In this document: positions 9,111 to 23,700 of the stretch, in pieces
Layout: each line of letters begins with the position of its first letter
Numbering within the stretch: the first letter of the stretch is position 1
Source of the DNA: Selaginella moellendorffii
Lineage: Eukaryota; Plantae; Lycopodiophyta
DNA: 64,000 nt
Reading direction: 5' to 3'
Assembly: GCF_000143415.4 (NCBI RefSeq)
Contig: NW_003314269.1
Location: 1,681,544 to 1,745,543 of the forward strand
The notes under the pieces: generated by a model
Database searches by the model: none
Seen by the model: the letters and a program-made list of their open reading frames with translations, nothing else
Told to the model about the DNA's origin: nothing
Program-made: the position numbers and the translations under genes

Positions 9111-9237
9111 GCGTTATACTATTTGAGAAAACACAGCGCATCGTCGCCGTCGATCAAACGCCATCTCAGCCATGTAGTTAAATTCGGTAGAAGAAGCTAG
9201 GGTTTTTTGTCTTAAGCTTGTGAAAGAGAGAAGAACG

Positions 9238-10173
9238 ATGGCAGTGGTGAGTGAGTTTAGGGAGGAAGATTGTGAAAAGCTTCTTAGCATTCATATGTTG
9301 GGGCAGCGAGGTTTCAAGAAAGGTAGGACGCTGGGGTGTGGCGGCCAGGGGCATGTATTCGTGCTCCAGAATCTGGACGGTCACAAGTCATATGCAGCCA
9401 AGGCATTTCGATCAGGGAGCGACGCTGAGAGAGAAGTTGGGATCATGGCCAAGCTCCGGGGCTGCCCTGGAGTTGTCTCCTTCAGAGATTTCATCAAGGA
9501 GAGAGATGGAGGACAGTGTTTTGGGAGTATTATTATGGAACTATGTGGATCTAGTCTTGCTGATCGCTTGCGCGTTTCCGGGCAGATGAGCGAAGAAGAA
9601 GCAGCTCAGATTATCAAGCAGCTGGCAGAGACCCTCAAGGAGATGCATTCGAGAGGCATAGTTCACCGGGATCTCAAGCCGGGCAACATCCTTTTCAAGC
9701 TAGACGCGCGCGACAAAGTGGTGATTAGTGACTTTGGTTTGGCCACAGACGACCCTGAGGAGATGTCGCAGTACTGTGGCACGGGGAAGTACATGGCACC
9801 CGAGGTGGCAGAGAACAAGGATGGGAGCTTCTACACAGCAGCTATCGACGTGTGGGGGCTTGGAGCGATTTTATACGAGATGCTGGGAAAGAGAGGATAT
9901 CAGCCGAGTGAAGCATTTGATCGTGTGCGACAGGGGGCATCCCCGGTTGGTCCTTTCTCGTTTGTAGCGGAGGATCTCCTTGAGAAGATGCTGGCTGTGG
10001 ATCCGAAACAAAGGCTGACAGTCGATCAGGTTCTACAACACCCATGGATTGTCAAGCTTTGCAGAAGCAGCAGCAGTAGGATCTACAGGACGTGGAGGAG
10101 GCCCTGTGGTGCGAAAAGGAGTGCTCCTGGCCTCGACAAGGACTTGGTCGTGAAGAAAGTTCGAGCGGCTTAA
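9238..10173 (+). CDS. Intronless Ser/Thr protein kinase (CAMK-group-like)
   Basis: LGCGGQGHV, YAAK, HRDLKPGN, DFG, CGTGKYMAPE, DVWGLG, QHPW motifs. Confidence 0.92.
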   Translation: MAVVSEFREEDCEKLLSIHMLGQRGFKKGRTLGCGGQGHVFVLQNLDGHKSYAAKAFRSGSDAEREVGIMAKLRGCPGVVSFRDFIKERDGGQCFGSIIMELCGSSLADRLRVSGQMSEEEAAQIIKQLAETLKEMHSRGIVHRDLKPGNILFKLDARDKVVISDFGLATDDPEEMSQYCGTGKYMAPEVAENKDGSFYTAAIDVWGLGAILYEMLGKRGYQPSEAFDRVRQGASPVGPFSFVAEDLLEKMLAVDPKQRLTVDQVLQHPWIVKLCRSSSSRIYRTWRRPCGAKRSAPGLDKDLVVKKVRAA

Positions 10174-16862: not shown

Positions 16863-18109
16863 CTAAACTATGAGCCCAGGATCTCTGCGAACGACATCCA
16901 TTTGATCGCGCTCAAGCATCGTGTTGACGACAAGTCGATCGTTTCCCTCGATCTCGGGAAAGATGATGGCCACTCCAGCCCACACAATTCCCATGGTTCC
17001 AGCGAATACCGGCTTGCCGCTTCCGAAATCCGCGCCAGCCATCTCCAATCGCTGCCAGCTCGAGATCACGAGATCCGAGGGGTTGAAGGAGAGCGAAATC
17101 TCTAGCGGGCTGTGGATAGCATGTGTTGGTGCGTGATCCTGCGCTTGGCTTCTTGGATGAGATTCACAGCGCCGTCGATCGATCCTGCCAGAAGCTGCTC
17201 GACGCTGGAGGATGCGATTGCAAGAAAGACCGCATTGCCCAGAAATCCATCGGGAATTGGAGGATTGAAACGTTTTCTCCCATTCACCGCGAAGCCTAGC
17301 CTCGTTTCCTCATGCGGTTGAAGAAGCGAGAGCTCGGTTCTGGCGCGGGTGATCGCGATCCAGAGGTGAGCCGCCAGTATTTCGAATCGAGTCGCGGTGG
17401 TGTCGCTCTTTAGCAGCGACCGAATGCCGCTGCTCGTGAAGGAGAGGATTGAGCGCTCCACATTGCTGGTGTCGGGGAAGGGCGGAGGCTCAATCTGGTA
17501 CTCCGCTGGAGTGGATTCCGGTGGAATTGCGTCAGGTTGCAGGAGCAGGGATCGTTCCAAGTGTGGCGGATTGACGCGATGCTCCTGGCCGGAGGAAATC
17601 AGCGCCCAGGATTTCACGAAATCGGCCGTGGCAACTCCATCGGCTGCGCTGTGGTGAGTCGCTACCTGGAGGCAAGCGCCGCCACACAGGAACCGAGTGA
17701 GCTTGATTGAGACAAGAGGAAGTTCCGTGGTTTCTTGTGTTGGGAAGGCCTCGCGCGACGCTAGGCTGTCGAGGCTGGGATTAAACTCGTGGAAGCTGCC
17801 AAGTTCTTCTTCTAGAGATTTGCTGGCGAGCGCTTCGAAGAACTCGATGCCAGAGTCGCAACACTGGATCTCGAGGGCCTGATTGGGAAGAAGCTTGTAG
17901 CGGCCGGCTAGCGGGTAGAATAGGGAGAGCGTCTTGGAGAGGGATAGCTTGAGCTGGTTGGAAGGGATGAATCGTGCGAAGAAGTAGAGGAAAGGCATGT
18001 AGACCCGAGGAGCAATCTGGTCGAGGCAGCTGAGAAGTATGGACGGTCGTGGTGGTGGAGAGGAGTTTGCAGGCTTGATGAGCTCTCGGACATTGGAAGC
18101 TACTTCCAT
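16863..18109 (-). pseudogene. BAHD acyltransferase with one frameshift near 17105 (pseudogene or sequence error)
   Basis: FYPLAGR and HHSAADG (HxxxD) are in ORF 17102-18109. The DFGWG-like motif ADFGSGKP lies in a different frame (16863-17069). Confidence 0.85.
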
Positions 18110-18148: not shown

Positions 18149-18574
18149 NNNNNNNNNNNNNNNNNNNNNNNNNNNNNNNNNNNNNNNNNNNNNNNNNNNN
18201 NNNNNNNNNNNNNNNNNNNNNNNNNNNNNNNNNNNNNNNNNNNNNNNNNNNNNNNNNNNNNNNNNNNNNNNNNNNNNNNNNNNNNNNNNNNNNNNNNNNN
18301 NNNNNNNNNNNNNNNNNNNNNNNNNNNNNNNNNNNNNNNNNNNNNNNNNNNNNNNNNNNNNNNNNNNNNNNNNNNNNNNNNNNNNNNNNNNNNNNNNNNN
18401 NNNNNNNNNNNNNNNNNNNNNNNNNNNNNNNNNNNNNNNNNNNNNNNNNNNNNNNNNNNNNNNNNNNNNNNNNNNNNNNNNNNNNNNNNNNNNNNNNNNN
18501 NNNNNNNNNNNNNNNNNNNNNNNNNNNNNNNNNNNNNNNNNNNNNNNNNNNNNNNNNNNNNNNNNNNNNNNNNN
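18149..18574. other. Assembly gap (N run)
   Basis: Run of n. Confidence 1.
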
Positions 18575-18942: not shown

Positions 18943-21243
18943 TTATATTAAACGTTTAAGCAGTGCCTCCCATCTCTTACTGAAGAAAACTGCGAAGGTC
19001 CACAGGATGCATGAAACACCACCACCAACAATGGCAGCCAGAATCGTTTGATCGCCATGACCGTCATCATCGTTTTCATCTTTGTGATCATCATGAAAAG
19101 GATCATGCAAACTAGCACACTCTGCAAGGGGGAAGCCACAAAGGCCTGGGTTTCCTTCATAGCTGCTCACCGGGAATAATGCAAGTTGAGCACTCTGTGG
19201 AACCCTTCCGAAAAGCTTGTTGTTCGAGATGTTTAAGTAATTCAGGAAGGTGAGGTTGCCAAGCGAGTCCGGGATGTTTGATTCAAGCCAGTTCTGTGAT
19301 AAATCTAGCCACTCCAGGTTCTTGAGGTTTCCAATTGTGGAAGGAATGGCCCCCGTAAGTAAGTTGTGTGCGAGATTTAGCACATTTAAGTCTCGCATGC
19401 CACCGAATTCCTCTGGGATTGTTCCAGTGAAGCTGTTGTGCGAGAGATCAATAGCCAAAGGACTGTTTACCAGAGTATATATTGTTAAGTTGAAACCAGG
19501 AGGTGCCAGAAAGAACCATCTTCTGCATCTGGTTGCAAACGGAAGTTGCTCAAAGTCATCCAAGCGGATCCCTTGCAGTATGAAAACCTCCTCATAAGCT
19601 TTGCAGATGGATGCCTCTATGTTGATTGCAAACACCATCAGAAACGGGAAGGTTACTTCGGTTATTTTATCCTCTTCCACTTCTGATGAGCGGCCGATCC
19701 AGCCTGGAATTTGTCCTGTCAACTGATTGTCGTTCACTAAAAACAAAGTTAGACCCTTGTTGTTTCTAAGCTCACTTGGTAGACCACCCTGAAGCATGTT
19801 GTGACCCAGTACGAGAGATCGAAGGCTCAACATACTTCCAATAGATGCGGGGATTGCTCCAGATATCATGTTGTTGCTCAGAAGCAGCAACCAGAGTTTC
19901 TTCAGCCCAGATATCTGCTGAGGAATGACACCTGTGAGATTGTTAAAACTGAGATTTAGTGTCACCAGCTCACTGCAGTTGCTGATTGTAGCGGGTATGC
20001 TGCCTTCAAGATTGTTCCCCCAAAGAAGAAGATGTTGAAGCTTCGGAAGTCTGCTGCACATATCCACTGGAATGGGCCCTGCTAGAGAATTGATGCTGAT
20101 ATCAAGCATTTCCAGGTTACCACAGTTCATGGCTGAGTTCAGAACCCGACCATGCAACCTGTTATATACCAGCAGCAAAGACTTAAGTGAGGACCTTGCA
20201 GGGCAGATGTTTGGGTTGCCAGTGCTGAACAAGTTGCAGCTCAGGTCTAGAACATTAAGACTTGGAGGAACTGTAGGGAGTTCACCTATAAAGTTGTTGT
20301 GGTCGGCTTGGAGAACTTTAAGAGACTTGAAAACCGTAGCTAAACTTCGATTGGCAAATACCGAGAGGAATGGGCCAGATAAGTGATTGTCTGATAGATT
20401 GAGCATCTTCAAAGCAGCACAATCCTTCCAAAAAACTGTCCCAGAAATGTTGTTAAAAGAGAGATCTAGCTCCTCCAGAGTAGGACAGTGCTTGATCTGA
20501 AATGTTGTGAAGAAGTTGGTAGACAGGTTGAGCTTCTGAAGACTGTTGGATGAACGTAGACCAGAAAGTTCCCCTGTCAAATTATTCGACGACAGTGAAA
20601 GCTCTTGTAAGCTTCTGCAGTTTATAAACATATCTTCAGGCACCCCTCCAACCAGCTGATTGCTCGATATGTCTAGAAACCGCAAGCTCTTACACAATGT
20701 GAAAAAGGAAGCAGGTATCGAGCCACTGATTCTGTTGTGAGATAAATCAACCGAAACCATAACATGCCCGATTGTTCCCTTCAGCGAAATTTTTCTTAGC
20801 TTGTTGTGTGAGAGGTTCAAGTACCTGATGTCTTTGCAAGTAACCAAAAGAATATCTAGAAAATCACTAGTGAAATCGTTGCTTGACAAATTGAGGACCT
20901 CCAAAGAGCATTTCTGCGGTGATATTTTGATCCCAGTGAAGTTGTTCCCAGAAGCACTCAAGGTGCGTAGTTGAGGCAGGGCTTGGATGGTAGAAAATGG
21001 AAGAAGGCCCGAAAGTGACAGAGAATCAAGCTGTATGCCAGTGATGCGGCCTACCGAGGAACAACTTACACCAATCCATTGGCAAACGTCTGTGCCTGCC
21101 TTCCAGTTATTCAGTGCCACCAGAGGATCATCCACAGAATTTTTAAAGCTCAAGAGTGCTTCCAACTCTGAATCTTCAGCATCTCCATGAAAAACAAGTC
21201 TGACAACAAGCAGGACAAGAGCAAATAGCCTACATAGCTCCAT
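18943..21243 (-). CDS. LRR receptor-like protein: signal peptide, LRRNT, LRR array, island domain + 4 LRRs, TM, short tail, no kinase
   Basis: MELCRLFALVLLVV signal peptide, CQWIGVSC cap, LxxLxLSxNxLSGxIP repeats, GNPGLCG C-cap, acidic juxtamembrane region, TM ILAAIVGGGVSCILWTFAVFF, and a stop 11 aa later. Confidence 0.93.
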   Translation of the reverse strand: MELCRLFALVLLVVRLVFHGDAEDSELEALLSFKNSVDDPLVALNNWKAGTDVCQWIGVSCSSVGRITGIQLDSLSLSGLLPFSTIQALPQLRTLSASGNNFTGIKISPQKCSLEVLNLSSNDFTSDFLDILLVTCKDIRYLNLSHNKLRKISLKGTIGHVMVSVDLSHNRISGSIPASFFTLCKSLRFLDISSNQLVGGVPEDMFINCRSLQELSLSSNNLTGELSGLRSSNSLQKLNLSTNFFTTFQIKHCPTLEELDLSFNNISGTVFWKDCAALKMLNLSDNHLSGPFLSVFANRSLATVFKSLKVLQADHNNFIGELPTVPPSLNVLDLSCNLFSTGNPNICPARSSLKSLLLVYNRLHGRVLNSAMNCGNLEMLDISINSLAGPIPVDMCSRLPKLQHLLLWGNNLEGSIPATISNCSELVTLNLSFNNLTGVIPQQISGLKKLWLLLLSNNMISGAIPASIGSMLSLRSLVLGHNMLQGGLPSELRNNKGLTLFLVNDNQLTGQIPGWIGRSSEVEEDKITEVTFPFLMVFAINIEASICKAYEEVFILQGIRLDDFEQLPFATRCRRWFFLAPPGFNLTIYTLVNSPLAIDLSHNSFTGTIPEEFGGMRDLNVLNLAHNLLTGAIPSTIGNLKNLEWLDLSQNWLESNIPDSLGNLTFLNYLNISNNKLFGRVPQSAQLALFPVSSYEGNPGLCGFPLAECASLHDPFHDDHKDENDDDGHGDQTILAAIVGGGVSCILWTFAVFFSKRWEALLKRLI

Positions 21244-21592
21244 TAGAATGCAACAACAATAAAATAAATGAATGGTGCGAGTCCTTGTGATCATATAAAG
21301 GCAACCAAGCATCAGTCAAATCTGGAGAGTATTCACACATGACTTTGACTGGCTGGTTCTTGAGAAATGAAATTGAACACGGCATACGAAGAGACAAAAG
21401 AAAAGAAGTTTCCCATGTAACATCTCCACCGTCGATCAAGGCGGATCGATATAGACGGGTACGATCGTAGCACCATCAAGATTGTTCTCTTTAGACGCGC
21501 TCTATCTTTTAAAAGTCAATGGAGCTGAATATGCTTCAGTTGCCCTCTCCATTCATGCCGAGTCGTTTCCGCACTACTATTGGTCTATGATC

Positions 21593-21646: not shown

Positions 21647-21949
21647 ACGGTGGAGAAAGCGCTTGACCAAGTGCAAATGCCATCTTGAGTACAAAGATAC
21701 ATCTCAAGTTCATAAAGCACTCTTTACAATACATAAAAACACTGGATCCTTTTATAAACTCGTTTTTAAACAAGTGGCCTATCCCCAGATCAGGACCATG
21801 TGAGCTGAGAGGTCCTGCTTGACTGTTTTCTATGGGTTGGAAGGTCTTCTGAAAGCAACAAACTTTCAGAAGGTCTAGGACGCAGGGAACAGAGCTTGCT
21901 GTGAGAACCACAAAACCTTTATTACCAAATAATGAATTTATACTAAAAC

Positions 21950-23632
21950 GAAAGCCCAGCGCTTACTGAAGAAAACTACATAGTAGGAATGAAGCACCAC
22001 CACTAATAATGGCAACCAGAATCATTTGACCATCACCACCATCACCTTGATCATCATCTTGCAAAGGAATAAGCAAACCAGCACACTCAGCAAGGGGTAA
22101 GCCACAAAGTCCTGGGTTTCCTTCATAGCTGCTCACCGGGAATGTTGCAAACTGAGCACCGGTGGAACCCTTCCGAGAAGCTTGTTCTACAAGATGTTTA
22201 AGTGTTTCAGGAAGGTGAAGTTGCCAAGCGAGTCCGGGATGTGTGATTCAAGCCAGTTCTGTGATAAATCTAGCCACTCCAGGTTCTTGAGGTTTCGAAG
22301 GAATGGCCCCTGTAAGTAAGTTGTGTGCGAGAAATAGCACATATAAGTCTCGCATATCAGTGAGTTAATTCCTGTGAAGGTGTTGTGCGAGAGATCAAGA
22401 ATCAAAAGACTGTTGACGTTAGTATCTGTTGTTAAGTTGGAACTAGGAGGTACCAGGAAGAGCCATCTTTGTGCTCAAAGTCATCCAAGCGGATCCCCTG
22501 CAGTATGAAAACCTCCTCGTAAGCTTTGCAGATGGATAGCTCTTTGTTGATCACATACACGATCAGTAACGGGAAGGTTATTTCGGTTATTTCATCCTCT
22601 TCCACTTCCGATGAGCCCGATCCAGCTTGGAATTTGTCCTGTCAACTGATTGTCGTTCACTAAAAACAAATGTTGTTTCTAACCTCACTTGATAGACCGT
22701 CCTGAAGCTTGTTGTGACCCAGTACGAGAAATCGAAGGCTCAGTACTTCCAATAGATGCGGGGATTGCTCCAGATATCATGTTGTTGCTCAGAAACAGCA
22801 AGAAGAGTTTCTTCAGCCAAGATATCTGCTGAGGAATAACACCTGTGATATTGTTAAAACTGACAATCCTTCCGAAAAACTGTCCCAGAAATGTTGTTAA
22901 AAGAGAGATCCAGCTCCTCCAGAGTAGGACACTGCTCGATCTGAAATGATGTGAAAACGTTGGTAGACAGGTTGAGCTTCTGAAGGCTGTTGGATGAACG
23001 TAGACCAGAAAGTTCCCCTGTCAAATTATTCGACGACAGTGAAAGCTCTTGTAAGCTTCTGCAGTTTATACACATATCTTCAGGCACCCCTCCAACCAGC
23101 TGATTGCTCGATATTTCTAGAGCTCTTGCACGATGCGAAAATGGAAGCAGCTATCGAGCCACTGATTCTGTTGTGAGATAAATCAACCGAAACCATAGCA
23201 TGCCCAATTGATCCCTTCAGCAAAAAATTTCTTATGAGAGGTTCAAGTGCCTGATGCCTTTGCACGTAACCAAAAGAATATCTAGAAAATCACTAGTGAA
23301 ATTGTTGCTTGACAAGTCGAGGACCTCCAAAGAGCATTTCTGTGGTGATATGTGGATCTCAGTGAAGTTGTTCCTCGAAGCAGACAAGTTGCCTTGGATT
23401 GTGCCCGAAAGTGACAGAGAATCAATCTGTATGCCAGTGATCCGCCCAACTTACAACTTACACCAATCCAGTGGCAAACGTTTGTGCCTGCCTTCCAGTC
23501 ATTCAGTGCCGCAAGAGGATCATCCACAGAAATTTTAAAGTTTAAGAGTGCTCTCACCTCTGAATCTTCAGCACCTGCATGAAAAACAATTCTGACAAGC
23601 AGGACAAGAGCAAGTAGCCTACATGGATCCAT
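21950..23632 (-). pseudogene. Decayed tandem copy of the LRR-RLP
   Basis: Co-linear with 18943-21243 (MDPCRLLALVLLV start, island ICKAYEEVFILQGIR, GNPGLCG). It has a large internal LRR deletion near 22860 and many frameshifts. Confidence 0.92.
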
Positions 23633-23700
23633 TAGAATGGGTTCGAACACGGAGTCAGAAGAGAAAGTCCAACCGAAATTTATCATTCTACTAATAGATA

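What the first reader, a model, noticed from the sequence alone, without database searches (positions are those of the whole stretch)
19440..19700. Kinase-less receptor-like protein with a BRI1/BRL-type island domain
Seen: the island reads FAINIEASICKAYEEVFILQGIRLDDFEQLPFATRC...LTIYTLVNSPLAIDLS. It is followed by four LRRs, QLALFPVSSYEGNPGLCGFPL, a TM helix and a stop, with no kinase. From memory, the BRL1/BRL3 island is [36 protein letters not shown]...TMYTF..NGSMI..D.S and the cap is QLTTFPVSRY.NNSGLCGVPL. The N-x5-C-x10-GIR-x6-LP-x4-C spacing aligns without gaps, including both island cysteines. Canonical BR receptors are generally described from seed plants, while this sequence appears to be lycophyte. 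Inference: this is a BRL-ectodomain-derived RLP that could sense a steroid or other small ligand with SOBIR1/SERK partners, act as a decoy, or record the RLP/RLK-Xb shared ancestry.
Basis: partly seen in the sequence, partly recalled or inferred. Interest (0 to 1): 0.88.

Follow-up and report, generated by a model that had tools for sequence, protein, structure and literature searches.

The report
Kinase-less BRI1-like receptor in Selaginella
This spikemoss (Selaginella moellendorffii) gene encodes an intact cell-surface protein whose outer part is related to the plant steroid-receptor (BRI1-like) family. It has no kinase and lacks the residues that family uses to hold the steroid, so it is probably a receptor or regulator for some other signal.

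Summary
Window 21312..18943 (minus strand) is one unspliced 789-codon ORF: signal peptide, about 20 LRRs, a 78-residue island (19692..19459), four LRRs, cap, acidic juxtamembrane stretch, TM helix, 11-residue tail, stop.

There is no kinase here, and none at three paralogous loci, including a gap-free syntenic copy.

The island is BRL-type:
- Its profile singly matches only BRI1, BRL1, BRL2 and BRL3 among solved structures.
- Island-only hhalign against BRL islands gives 92.9% (E 3.7e-7), against canonical RLP islands 0.07%.
- Trees join the Selaginella clades with BRL kinases (100/98). Union with canonical RLPs is rejected (AU p 0.0012).

The steroid reading is not supported. Trp564, Tyr642, Gly611 and Gly613 are invariant in 45 BRL kinases; Trp564, Tyr642 and Gly613 are replaced in every Selaginella clade and Gly611 in the window's own clade. 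Pfam's Island model is not reached.

The family is under purifying selection (dN/dS about 0.3). Its juxtamembrane and tail are RLP-like.

RNA reads come from the 94.6%-identical paralog, not clearly from this copy.

Published work says Selaginella has no BRL homolog. The scan already noted this family on other DNA of this genome (s1-351387, s1-408288).

Verdict: a real lineage-specific BRL-related RLP with an unknown ligand; moderate interest.

The parts
18943..21312 (-). Whole ORF, 789 codons plus TAA stop, with no intron
   Evidence: ORF list; sequence. RNA reads of the close paralog cross the whole body without joints.
21181..21243 (-). Probable true start (Met24, MELCRLF...) and signal peptide
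   Evidence: Database model P0004 starts here. Paralogs L001 and L002 start at the equivalent Met.
21058..21174 (-). N-terminal cap (LRRNT_2), residues 47-85
   Evidence: Pfam PF08263, E 1.4e-12.
19693..21057 (-). About 19-20 plant-type LRRs before the island, residues 86-540
   Evidence: Pfam LRR families; repeat count. The best colinear matches of this half are BRL kinases.
19459..19692 (-). Island domain, residues 541-618. The core N-x5-C-x10-GIR-x6-LP-x4-C is kept; the pocket loop is diverged.
   Evidence: AF2 pLDDT is 57-80 in this stretch.
19165..19458 (-). Four LRRs after the island (C3 region), residues 619-716
19117..19164 (-). C-terminal cap ...YEGNPGLCGFPLAEC, residues 717-732
19048..19116 (-). 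Acidic outer juxtamembrane stretch. Net charge from cap to TM is -9.
18979..19047 (-). TM helix, residues 756-778. It has four small-xxx-small motifs and no strict GxxxG.
18943..18978 (-). Eleven-residue basic tail KRWEALLKRLI and the stop
   Evidence: The tail pattern is kept in paralogs only 62-65% identical.
21944..23638 (-). Decayed tandem copy upstream, 40-70% identical in pieces and broken by stops and frame changes
18149..18574 (.). Assembly gap (426 N) between the stop and the next gene
   Evidence: The gap-free syntenic locus L001 has about 1.1 kb here with no kinase-like sequence.

Best explanation
The gene is an intact member of a small Selaginella moellendorffii family of kinase-less LRR receptor-like proteins. 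At least three clades exist, called here A, B and C; the window copy is in clade A. The entire ectodomain is related to the BRI1-like (BRL) receptor kinases. It keeps the BRL architecture of about 20 LRRs, island and 4 LRRs, and the island scaffold (both cysteines, GIR, LP). The residues that line the brassinosteroid pocket are replaced. Behind the cap it carries what canonical RLPs carry: an acidic outer juxtamembrane stretch, a TM helix with small-xxx-small motifs and a short basic tail. Inferred mechanism: it sits in the plasma membrane, binds a ligand that is probably not a classical brassinosteroid in the groove between island and LRRs, and signals or regulates signalling by pairing with kinase-bearing partners. 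The likely partners are a SERK on the last four LRRs and a SOBIR1-like adaptor through the juxtamembrane and TM region. Shown here: anatomy, absence of a kinase, relatedness to BRLs, purifying selection, transcription of a close paralog. Inferred: ligand, partners, output.
For: Anatomy and stop. No kinase in the window, in the gap-free syntenic locus L001 or at loci L002 and L003. All four ORFs stop 11-17 residues after the TM, with a conserved tail. No splice joints in RNA reads. The next gene, a BAHD Transferase, starts at 18109. BRL relatedness: sequence; island-only profiles; Sm+BRL 100/98; Sm+RLP rejected, p 0.0012; still SH-aLRT 99 with island columns removed; N-terminal half. Structure; the model is pLDDT 86.8, and BRL3 and BRI1 give Z 43 with 345 of 353 residues aligned at 1.9-2.1 A, while other LRR receptors reach Z 34 or less with 304 or fewer aligned. 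Selection: dN/dS 0.28-0.33 between clades A and B in every region, including island, TM and tail. RLP-like rear end: net charge -9 against 0 to +6 in most BRL kinases (four of 23 reach -1 to -3) and -7 to +2 (mostly negative) in canonical RLPs. Pocket loss: with PMC13481262.
Against: Pfam Island PF20141 is not reached: no hit for the window, and 12.3 bits against a cut-off of 23.6 for a paralog. The AF2 island is only moderately confident, and the alignment used to build it held BRLs, so the fold match is not independent. The TM has no strict GxxxG, and the last-LRR motif is AQLAL rather than QxxT/S in clade A, so pairing with SOBIR1 or SERK is not assured. In three RNA runs all reads carry the L001 allele at 27 of 27 variant sites. 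Transcription of this exact copy therefore rests only on contigs of one run of uncertain kind. No PSKR, PSY1R, EMS1 or bryophyte BRL was in the tree.
Confidence: 0.7

Rival explanations
1. Non-canonical brassinosteroid sensor: the family still binds a Selaginella brassinosteroid or precursor in a remodelled pocket, and relays through partner kinases. This would fill the gap left by the missing BRI1/BRL kinase.
For: Selaginella responds to brassinosteroid and to a biosynthesis inhibitor but has no reported receptor (PMC3862569; PMC7084555). The island scaffold, Gly644 and aromatic residues near positions 597/599 are kept, and the island core is strongly conserved between clades. The BR pocket is described as structurally plastic (PMC13481262).
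Against: Trp564 is invariant in 45 of 45 BRL kinases and is Leu, Gln, His or Val here. In BRI1 the change to His cuts binding about 100-fold and gives a null phenotype. Tyr642 and Gly613 are also lost in all clades and Gly611 in clade A. The C-terminal part of the island, which carries the 642-647 loop, does not align in hhalign.
Confidence: 0.08
2. Decoy or negative regulator: with no output domain of its own, it titrates a ligand or a SERK co-receptor away from signalling receptors.
For: There is no kinase and only an 11-residue tail. The four-LRR co-receptor platform is kept. The family is under purifying selection.
Against: The acidic juxtamembrane stretch and small-xxx-small TM resemble features linked in canonical RLPs to recruiting an adaptor kinase, that is, to signalling (PMC10834447). 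Nothing here distinguishes a decoy from a receptor.
Confidence: 0.12
3. This particular copy is a silent or decaying duplicate; only its paralogs work.
For: RNA reads of three runs all carry the L001 allele, 27 of 27 sites. A dead tandem copy lies directly upstream. dN/dS against L001 is 0.46, higher than between clades.
Against: The ORF is intact over 789 codons. Contigs of run X1 match this allele with 0-2 differences and cover only 19032-21248, which is the coding body. The RNA runs may come from a plant lacking this allele.
Confidence: 0.2
4. Assembly or annotation artefact: a kinase exon is hidden in the 426-N gap or is reached by splicing from the donor-like CA|GTAAGA at 18979.
For: A gap lies 370 bp after the stop, and a donor-like site lies at the end of the TM codons.
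Against: The gap-free syntenic locus L001 has no kinase-like sequence between the stop and the BAHD gene. The tail after the would-be donor is conserved as protein in four loci, with dN/dS 0.06-0.47. No joints or loose ends appear there, though depth at that end is very low. The next gene starts 40 bp beyond the gap.
Confidence: 0.02

Closest known systems
Arabidopsis BRL3, BRL1 and BRI1 ectodomains (PDB 9S90, 4J0M, 3RIZ)
   Same: Island followed by four LRRs and the cap. Island core with both cysteines and GIR. 38-40% identity over the last 350 residues. Model superposes at Z 43, rmsd 1.9-2.1 A, about 345 residues.
   Different: No kinase. Trp564, Tyr642, Gly611 and Gly613 equivalents replaced in this copy. 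Four-residue insertion at the start of the island and a remodelled 642-647 loop. Acidic instead of neutral or basic juxtamembrane stretch.
Diphasiastrum complanatum BRL receptor kinase KAJ7298915.1 (P0185)
   Same: Lycophyte. It is the best island-spanning match outside Selaginella (48.6 bits) and shares CKG...GIR...QLP...C.
   Different: It has a kinase domain, reaches Pfam Island (34.7 bits) and keeps Trp564 and Tyr642.
LRR-RLPs inside the BRI1/BRL ectodomain clade noted by Ngou et al. 2024 (PMC10834447)
   Same: Kinase-less proteins with BRL-like ectodomains. Their function is unexplored.
   Different: Those are described as highly similar to BRL1/BRL3 and as keeping the BR-binding residues. 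The Selaginella family is old (three clades, dS about 0.65 between two of them), has lost those residues, and occurs in a plant reported to lack BRL kinases. Selaginella is not discussed in that text.
Canonical ID+4LRR receptor-like proteins (RLP23, RXEG1, EIX, Cf type)
   Same: No kinase, island before the last four LRRs, acidic outer juxtamembrane stretch, short basic tail.
   Different: The island is unrelated (hhalign 0.07%) and has no Yx8KG or Kx5Y motif. No strict GxxxG. A clade with them is rejected, AU p 0.0012.

Membership tests
BRI1/BRL receptor kinases (LRR-RLK Xb, BRI1 clade) | Island domain inserted before the last four LRRs of a long LRR ectodomain | tested here: met
   About 20 LRRs, a 78-residue island and 4 LRRs; colinear with BRL3.
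BRI1/BRL receptor kinases (LRR-RLK Xb, BRI1 clade) | Island reaches Pfam PF20141 (Brassinosteroid receptor island domain), cut-off 23.6 bits | tested here: not met
   No hit for the window protein; a paralog scores 12.3 bits. BRL3 scores 106.8, BRL2 74.9 and the Diphasiastrum BRL 34.7.
BRI1/BRL receptor kinases (LRR-RLK Xb, BRI1 clade) | Island homologous to BRL islands by profile comparison | tested here: met
   hhalign 92.9%, E 3.7e-7 over 39 core columns; control against RLP islands 0.07%. In the PDB only BRI1 and BRL1-3 match singly.
BRI1/BRL receptor kinases (LRR-RLK Xb, BRI1 clade) | Cytoplasmic Xb-type protein kinase domain | tested here: not met
   Stop 11 residues after the TM. No kinase in Pfam or by tblastn in the window or in three paralogous loci.
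BRI1/BRL receptor kinases (LRR-RLK Xb, BRI1 clade) | Steroid-pocket residues Trp564, Tyr642, Gly611, Gly613 (BRI1 numbering) | tested here: not met
   Each is 45 of 45 in BRL kinases. In the window copy they are Leu, not aligned to Tyr, Ala and Glu. Their importance is described in PMC13481262.
BRI1/BRL receptor kinases (LRR-RLK Xb, BRI1 clade) | Falls inside the clade of BRL kinases in a tree | tested here: inconclusive
   Sister to all 23 BRL kinases (96/93). Sm+BRL is supported at 100/98. A clade with the lycophyte BRL is not rejected, p 0.198.
Canonical ID+4LRR LRR-RLPs | TM-anchored LRR ectodomain with a short tail and no kinase | tested here: met
Canonical ID+4LRR LRR-RLPs | Negatively charged outer juxtamembrane stretch | tested here: met
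   Net charge -9, and -7 in the last 15 residues. Criterion from PMC10834447.
Canonical ID+4LRR LRR-RLPs | GxxxG motif in the TM helix | tested here: not met
   No GxxxG; four small-xxx-small motifs.
Canonical ID+4LRR LRR-RLPs | Island with Yx8KG or Kx5Y motifs, and relatedness to RLP islands | tested here: not met
   Motifs are absent from the island text. hhalign against 13 RLP islands gives 0.07%. A clade with RLPs is rejected.
PSKR/PSY1R receptors | PSKR-type island | tested here: not met
   PSKR1 chains match only the LRR flank (profile positions 98-125) and no stretch passes singly. Structure match is Z 30 or less with 288 or fewer residues aligned. No PSKR was in the tree.

The most novel reading that the evidence does not exclude
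These kinase-less BRL-related proteins are the long-sought brassinosteroid (or sterol-precursor) sensors of Selaginella. They would bind the hormone in a remodelled island pocket and signal through adaptor kinases. Steroid perception would then have been rebuilt on an RLP chassis in one lycophyte lineage.
Probability: 0.07. Interest if true: 0.9.

Novelty: new variant of a known kind. Interest (0 to 1): 0.5.

Why it matters
Papers on brassinosteroid evolution state that Selaginella has no BRI1/BRL homolog and no receptor with a BRI1-type island, although the plant responds to the hormone (PMC3862569, PMC9223546, PMC7084555). This gene and its relatives show that descendants or sisters of the BRL ectodomain are present, conserved and transcribed, but as kinase-less proteins with a changed pocket.

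Three things follow. It gives concrete candidates to test for hormone binding. It gives a natural example of a BRL ectodomain joined to an RLP-type membrane region, which bears on the proposed common origin of RLPs and RLK-Xb. And it corrects database names such as 'receptor-like protein kinase BRI1-like 3' for proteins that have no kinase.

Tried and rejected
1. The exhaustive representative search with the island-plus-flank profile was swamped by very long LRR proteins that add up many weak repeat matches. Its ranking is useless. Only re-scoring single stretches locally was informative.

2. Pfam Island was expected to settle membership but is not reached.

3. A kinase exon hidden in the 426-N gap, or splicing from the donor-like CA|GTAAGA at 18979, was considered and rejected.

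4. A chimeric origin, with a BRL island placed in an RLP backbone, was rejected. The tree without island columns and the N-terminal half both point to BRLs.

5. An island-only word search for relatives in other species found only S. moellendorffii proteins. This may reflect database coverage and the word filter, because even clade B was missed.

6. P0034 could not be located on a contig.

7. The supplementary tables of Ngou et al. list Selaginella only in species counts.

8. RNA evidence for this exact copy failed, because the reads belong to the paralog.
Full report
**What is there.** The window is Selaginella moellendorffii. The ORF product is 98% identical over its last 270 residues to SELMODRAFT_75440 and to a RefSeq protein named 'receptor-like protein kinase BRI1-like 3'. 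On the minus strand, 21312..18943 is one open frame of 789 codons ending in TAA. A database model and the paralogs begin at the Met at 21243 (MELCRLF...), which opens a signal peptide. Pfam finds an LRRNT_2 cap and LRR families only. Counting repeats gives about 19-20 LRRs, then a 78-residue non-LRR stretch (residues 541-618, window 19692..19459), then four LRRs and the cap ...YEGNPGLCGFPLAEC. Behind the cap come a very acidic stretch, a 23-residue TM helix, the tail KRWEALLKRLI and the stop.

**Is the kinase really absent?** The 370 bases after the stop are AT-rich and closed in all frames. Then comes a 426-N gap (18149-18574). Forty bases beyond it a separate BAHD acyltransferase gene starts on the same strand. 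A syntenic locus from the public assembly (L001, GL377573.1) is 94.6% identical over the gene and has the same neighbours. It has no gap and no kinase-like sequence between the stop and the BAHD gene. Two more diverged loci (L002, L003) also have no kinase within 8 kb on either side. All four ORFs stop 11-17 residues after the TM, and the tail pattern VFF[SN]K[RS]WE..L[KQ]R is kept at 62-65% overall identity. A donor-like CA|GTAAGA lies at 18979, but the codons after it are conserved as protein. Stranded RNA reads show no joint anywhere in the gene, although depth at that end is very low. The only kinase-like sequence in the window is at 9136-9930 on the other strand and is unrelated.

**Is the island BRL-type?**
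- By sequence, the best solved structures are BRL3 (3.6e-117) and BRL1, with one alignment running through the island.
- Whole-protein scores are inflated by LRRs; GSO1 scores the same as BRL3. I therefore built a profile of the island plus one LRR on each side from five family members (A1).
- In the PDB only BRI1, BRL1, BRL2 and BRL3 have a stretch that passes on its own, and it spans profile positions 1-125. PSKR1, RXEG1, FLS2 and the rest match only an LRR flank.
- Among 409 fetched proteins, island-spanning stretches of 22-49 bits occur only in proteins carrying Pfam Island PF20141 and in one further Selaginella cluster (P0215/P0267). All other RLPs and RLKs score 18 bits or less.
- The best match outside Selaginella is a Diphasiastrum complanatum protein with a kinase domain and a Pfam-recognised island.
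- Island-only profile comparison gives 92.9% probability and E 3.7e-7 over the 39-column core. The control against 13 canonical RLP islands gives 0.07%.
- Pfam's own Island model is nevertheless not reached, so the island is a strongly diverged relative.

**Phylogeny.** I aligned the last 353 ectodomain residues of 52 proteins: six Selaginella, 23 BRL kinases from lycophyte to angiosperm, 16 RLPs and 7 other RLKs. RGI4 (P0049) and a Diphasiastrum RLK (P0085) were left out because no cap motif could be found.
- The Selaginella sequences form one group (99/94) with three clades.
- The group joins the BRL kinases at 100/98, and the BRL kinases form its sister at 96/93.
- Forcing Selaginella together with the RLPs is rejected (AU p 0.0012).
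- Forcing it together with the Diphasiastrum BRL is not rejected (p 0.198).
- With the island columns removed, Selaginella+BRL still has SH-aLRT 99.
- The N-terminal half finds BRLs as its best colinear matches.

The whole ectodomain is therefore BRL-related and is not a chimera. Whether the kinase was lost in the Selaginella lineage or the family is an older sister line stays open. PSKR, PSY1R, EMS1 and bryophyte BRLs were not available for the tree.

**Pocket.** The BRI1 numbering used here comes from my own recollection of the sequence. It is checked against the equivalence Ser647 = Met632 of BRL1/3 given in PMC13481262 and against a cotton BRI1 island. In 45 BRL kinases, Trp564, Asn602, Cys609, Gly611, Gly613 and Tyr642 are invariant. 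The family compares as follows.
- Kept in clades A and B: both cysteines, GIR, the LP, Asn602 and Gly644.
- Trp564 is Leu in clade A (the window), Gln or His in clade B, and Val in clade C.
- Gly613 is Glu or Asn.
- Gly611 is Ala in clade A.
- The 642-647 loop is rebuilt as ...WFFLAPPGFN..., with no aligned Tyr.

PMC13481262 reports that Trp564-to-His lowers brassinolide binding about 100-fold and phenocopies a null. Classical brassinosteroid binding is therefore unlikely, though not excluded given the pocket's reported plasticity.

**Structure.** An AF2 model of residues 382-745 has mean pLDDT 86.8, but 57-80 in the island.
- Foldseek's top 21 hits are all BRI1-family ectodomains; BRL3 gives TM 0.87 and rmsd 2.8 A.
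- VIA-align gives Z 41-43 with 343-347 residues aligned for most BRI1, BRL1 and BRL3 chains. Other LRR receptors reach Z 34 or less with 304 or fewer residues aligned, which is the solenoid without the island.
- The input alignment contained BRLs, so this shows compatibility and is not independent proof.

**Is it functional?** Between clades A and B, dN/dS is 0.28-0.33 overall and 0.17-0.37 in the island, with similar values in the TM and tail. The island core is nearly invariant across clades. Stranded RNA reads from three runs cover 19000-21100 in the sense orientation. At 27 of 27 variant sites they carry the L001 allele, so they show expression of the paralog and not of this copy. Contigs of run X1, whose kind is uncertain, match this allele with 0-2 differences and cover only the coding body. 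A dead tandem copy lies upstream at 23638..21944.

**How it probably works.** The rear end differs from BRL kinases and resembles canonical RLPs. Net juxtamembrane charge is -9; in most BRL kinases it is 0 to +6 (four of 23 reach -1 to -3), and in canonical RLPs -7 to +2, mostly negative. The TM has four small-xxx-small motifs but no strict GxxxG, and the tail is 11 residues. In Arabidopsis RLP23 the TM with its GxxxG motifs is needed for constitutive SOBIR1 binding and the outer juxtamembrane stretch for BAK1 recruitment, and the last four LRRs bind SERKs (PMC10834447). The most likely mechanism is therefore a ligand-binding surface protein that works through partner kinases. A decoy role is the main alternative.

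**Novelty.** Cheon 2013, Zheng 2022 and a 2020 review state that Selaginella lacks BRI1/BRL homologs or island-bearing receptors. Ngou 2024 mention RLPs in the BRI1/BRL clade that keep the BR-binding residues, without discussing Selaginella. I found no paper describing this family. Earlier notes of this scan on other pieces of the same genome reached a similar reading. I re-derived each point here.

Noticed in passing
window 21944-23638 (-): A decayed tandem copy of the same gene. The N-terminal 300 residues are 68-70% identical; the C-terminal part is 40-44% identical and broken by stops and frame changes. It seems to lack most of the middle LRRs.
   Followed up: partly
window 20413-20479: A 66-base stretch inside the gene collects many RNA reads in the opposite library orientation (depth 7-13). 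The same loose ends appear on both sides in all three runs. They come from another, more highly expressed transcript that shares this short piece; its identity is unknown.
   Followed up: no
window 17102-18109 (-): BAHD acyltransferase ORF of 335 residues (Pfam Transferase, E 2.8e-51) covering profile positions 2-342 of 434. The last quarter is missing from the ORF, through an intron or a truncation. RNA reads cover it.
   Followed up: partly
P0001, P0002, P0003, P0008, P0009 (public gene models of the family): Several database models are fusions. P0002 joins parts of two tandem copies. P0003 carries an upstream fragment that looks C2-domain-like by eye (not confirmed by Pfam). P0008 and P0009 run on into what looks by eye like a GDSL-lipase gene (not tested). 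All are named '...kinase BRI1-like' although none has a kinase domain.
   Followed up: partly
P0185 / P0266 (Diphasiastrum complanatum KAJ7298915.1, KAJ7569966.1): A lycophyte BRL receptor kinase with a Pfam-recognised island that keeps Trp564 and Tyr642. Island-bearing BRL kinases therefore exist in Lycopodiaceae, contrary to older statements that islands occur only in seed plants.
   Followed up: partly
P0215 / P0267 (XP_024541288.1, XP_024521174.1): A third, more diverged Selaginella clade of kinase-less BRL-related proteins (models of 510-564 residues, probably cut at the N-terminus) with its own island variant and tail.
   Followed up: partly
window 9136-9930 (+): A protein-kinase-like coding region, 28-33% identical to BRL kinase domains. 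It lies 9 kb away on the other strand and is unrelated to the finding.
   Followed up: no
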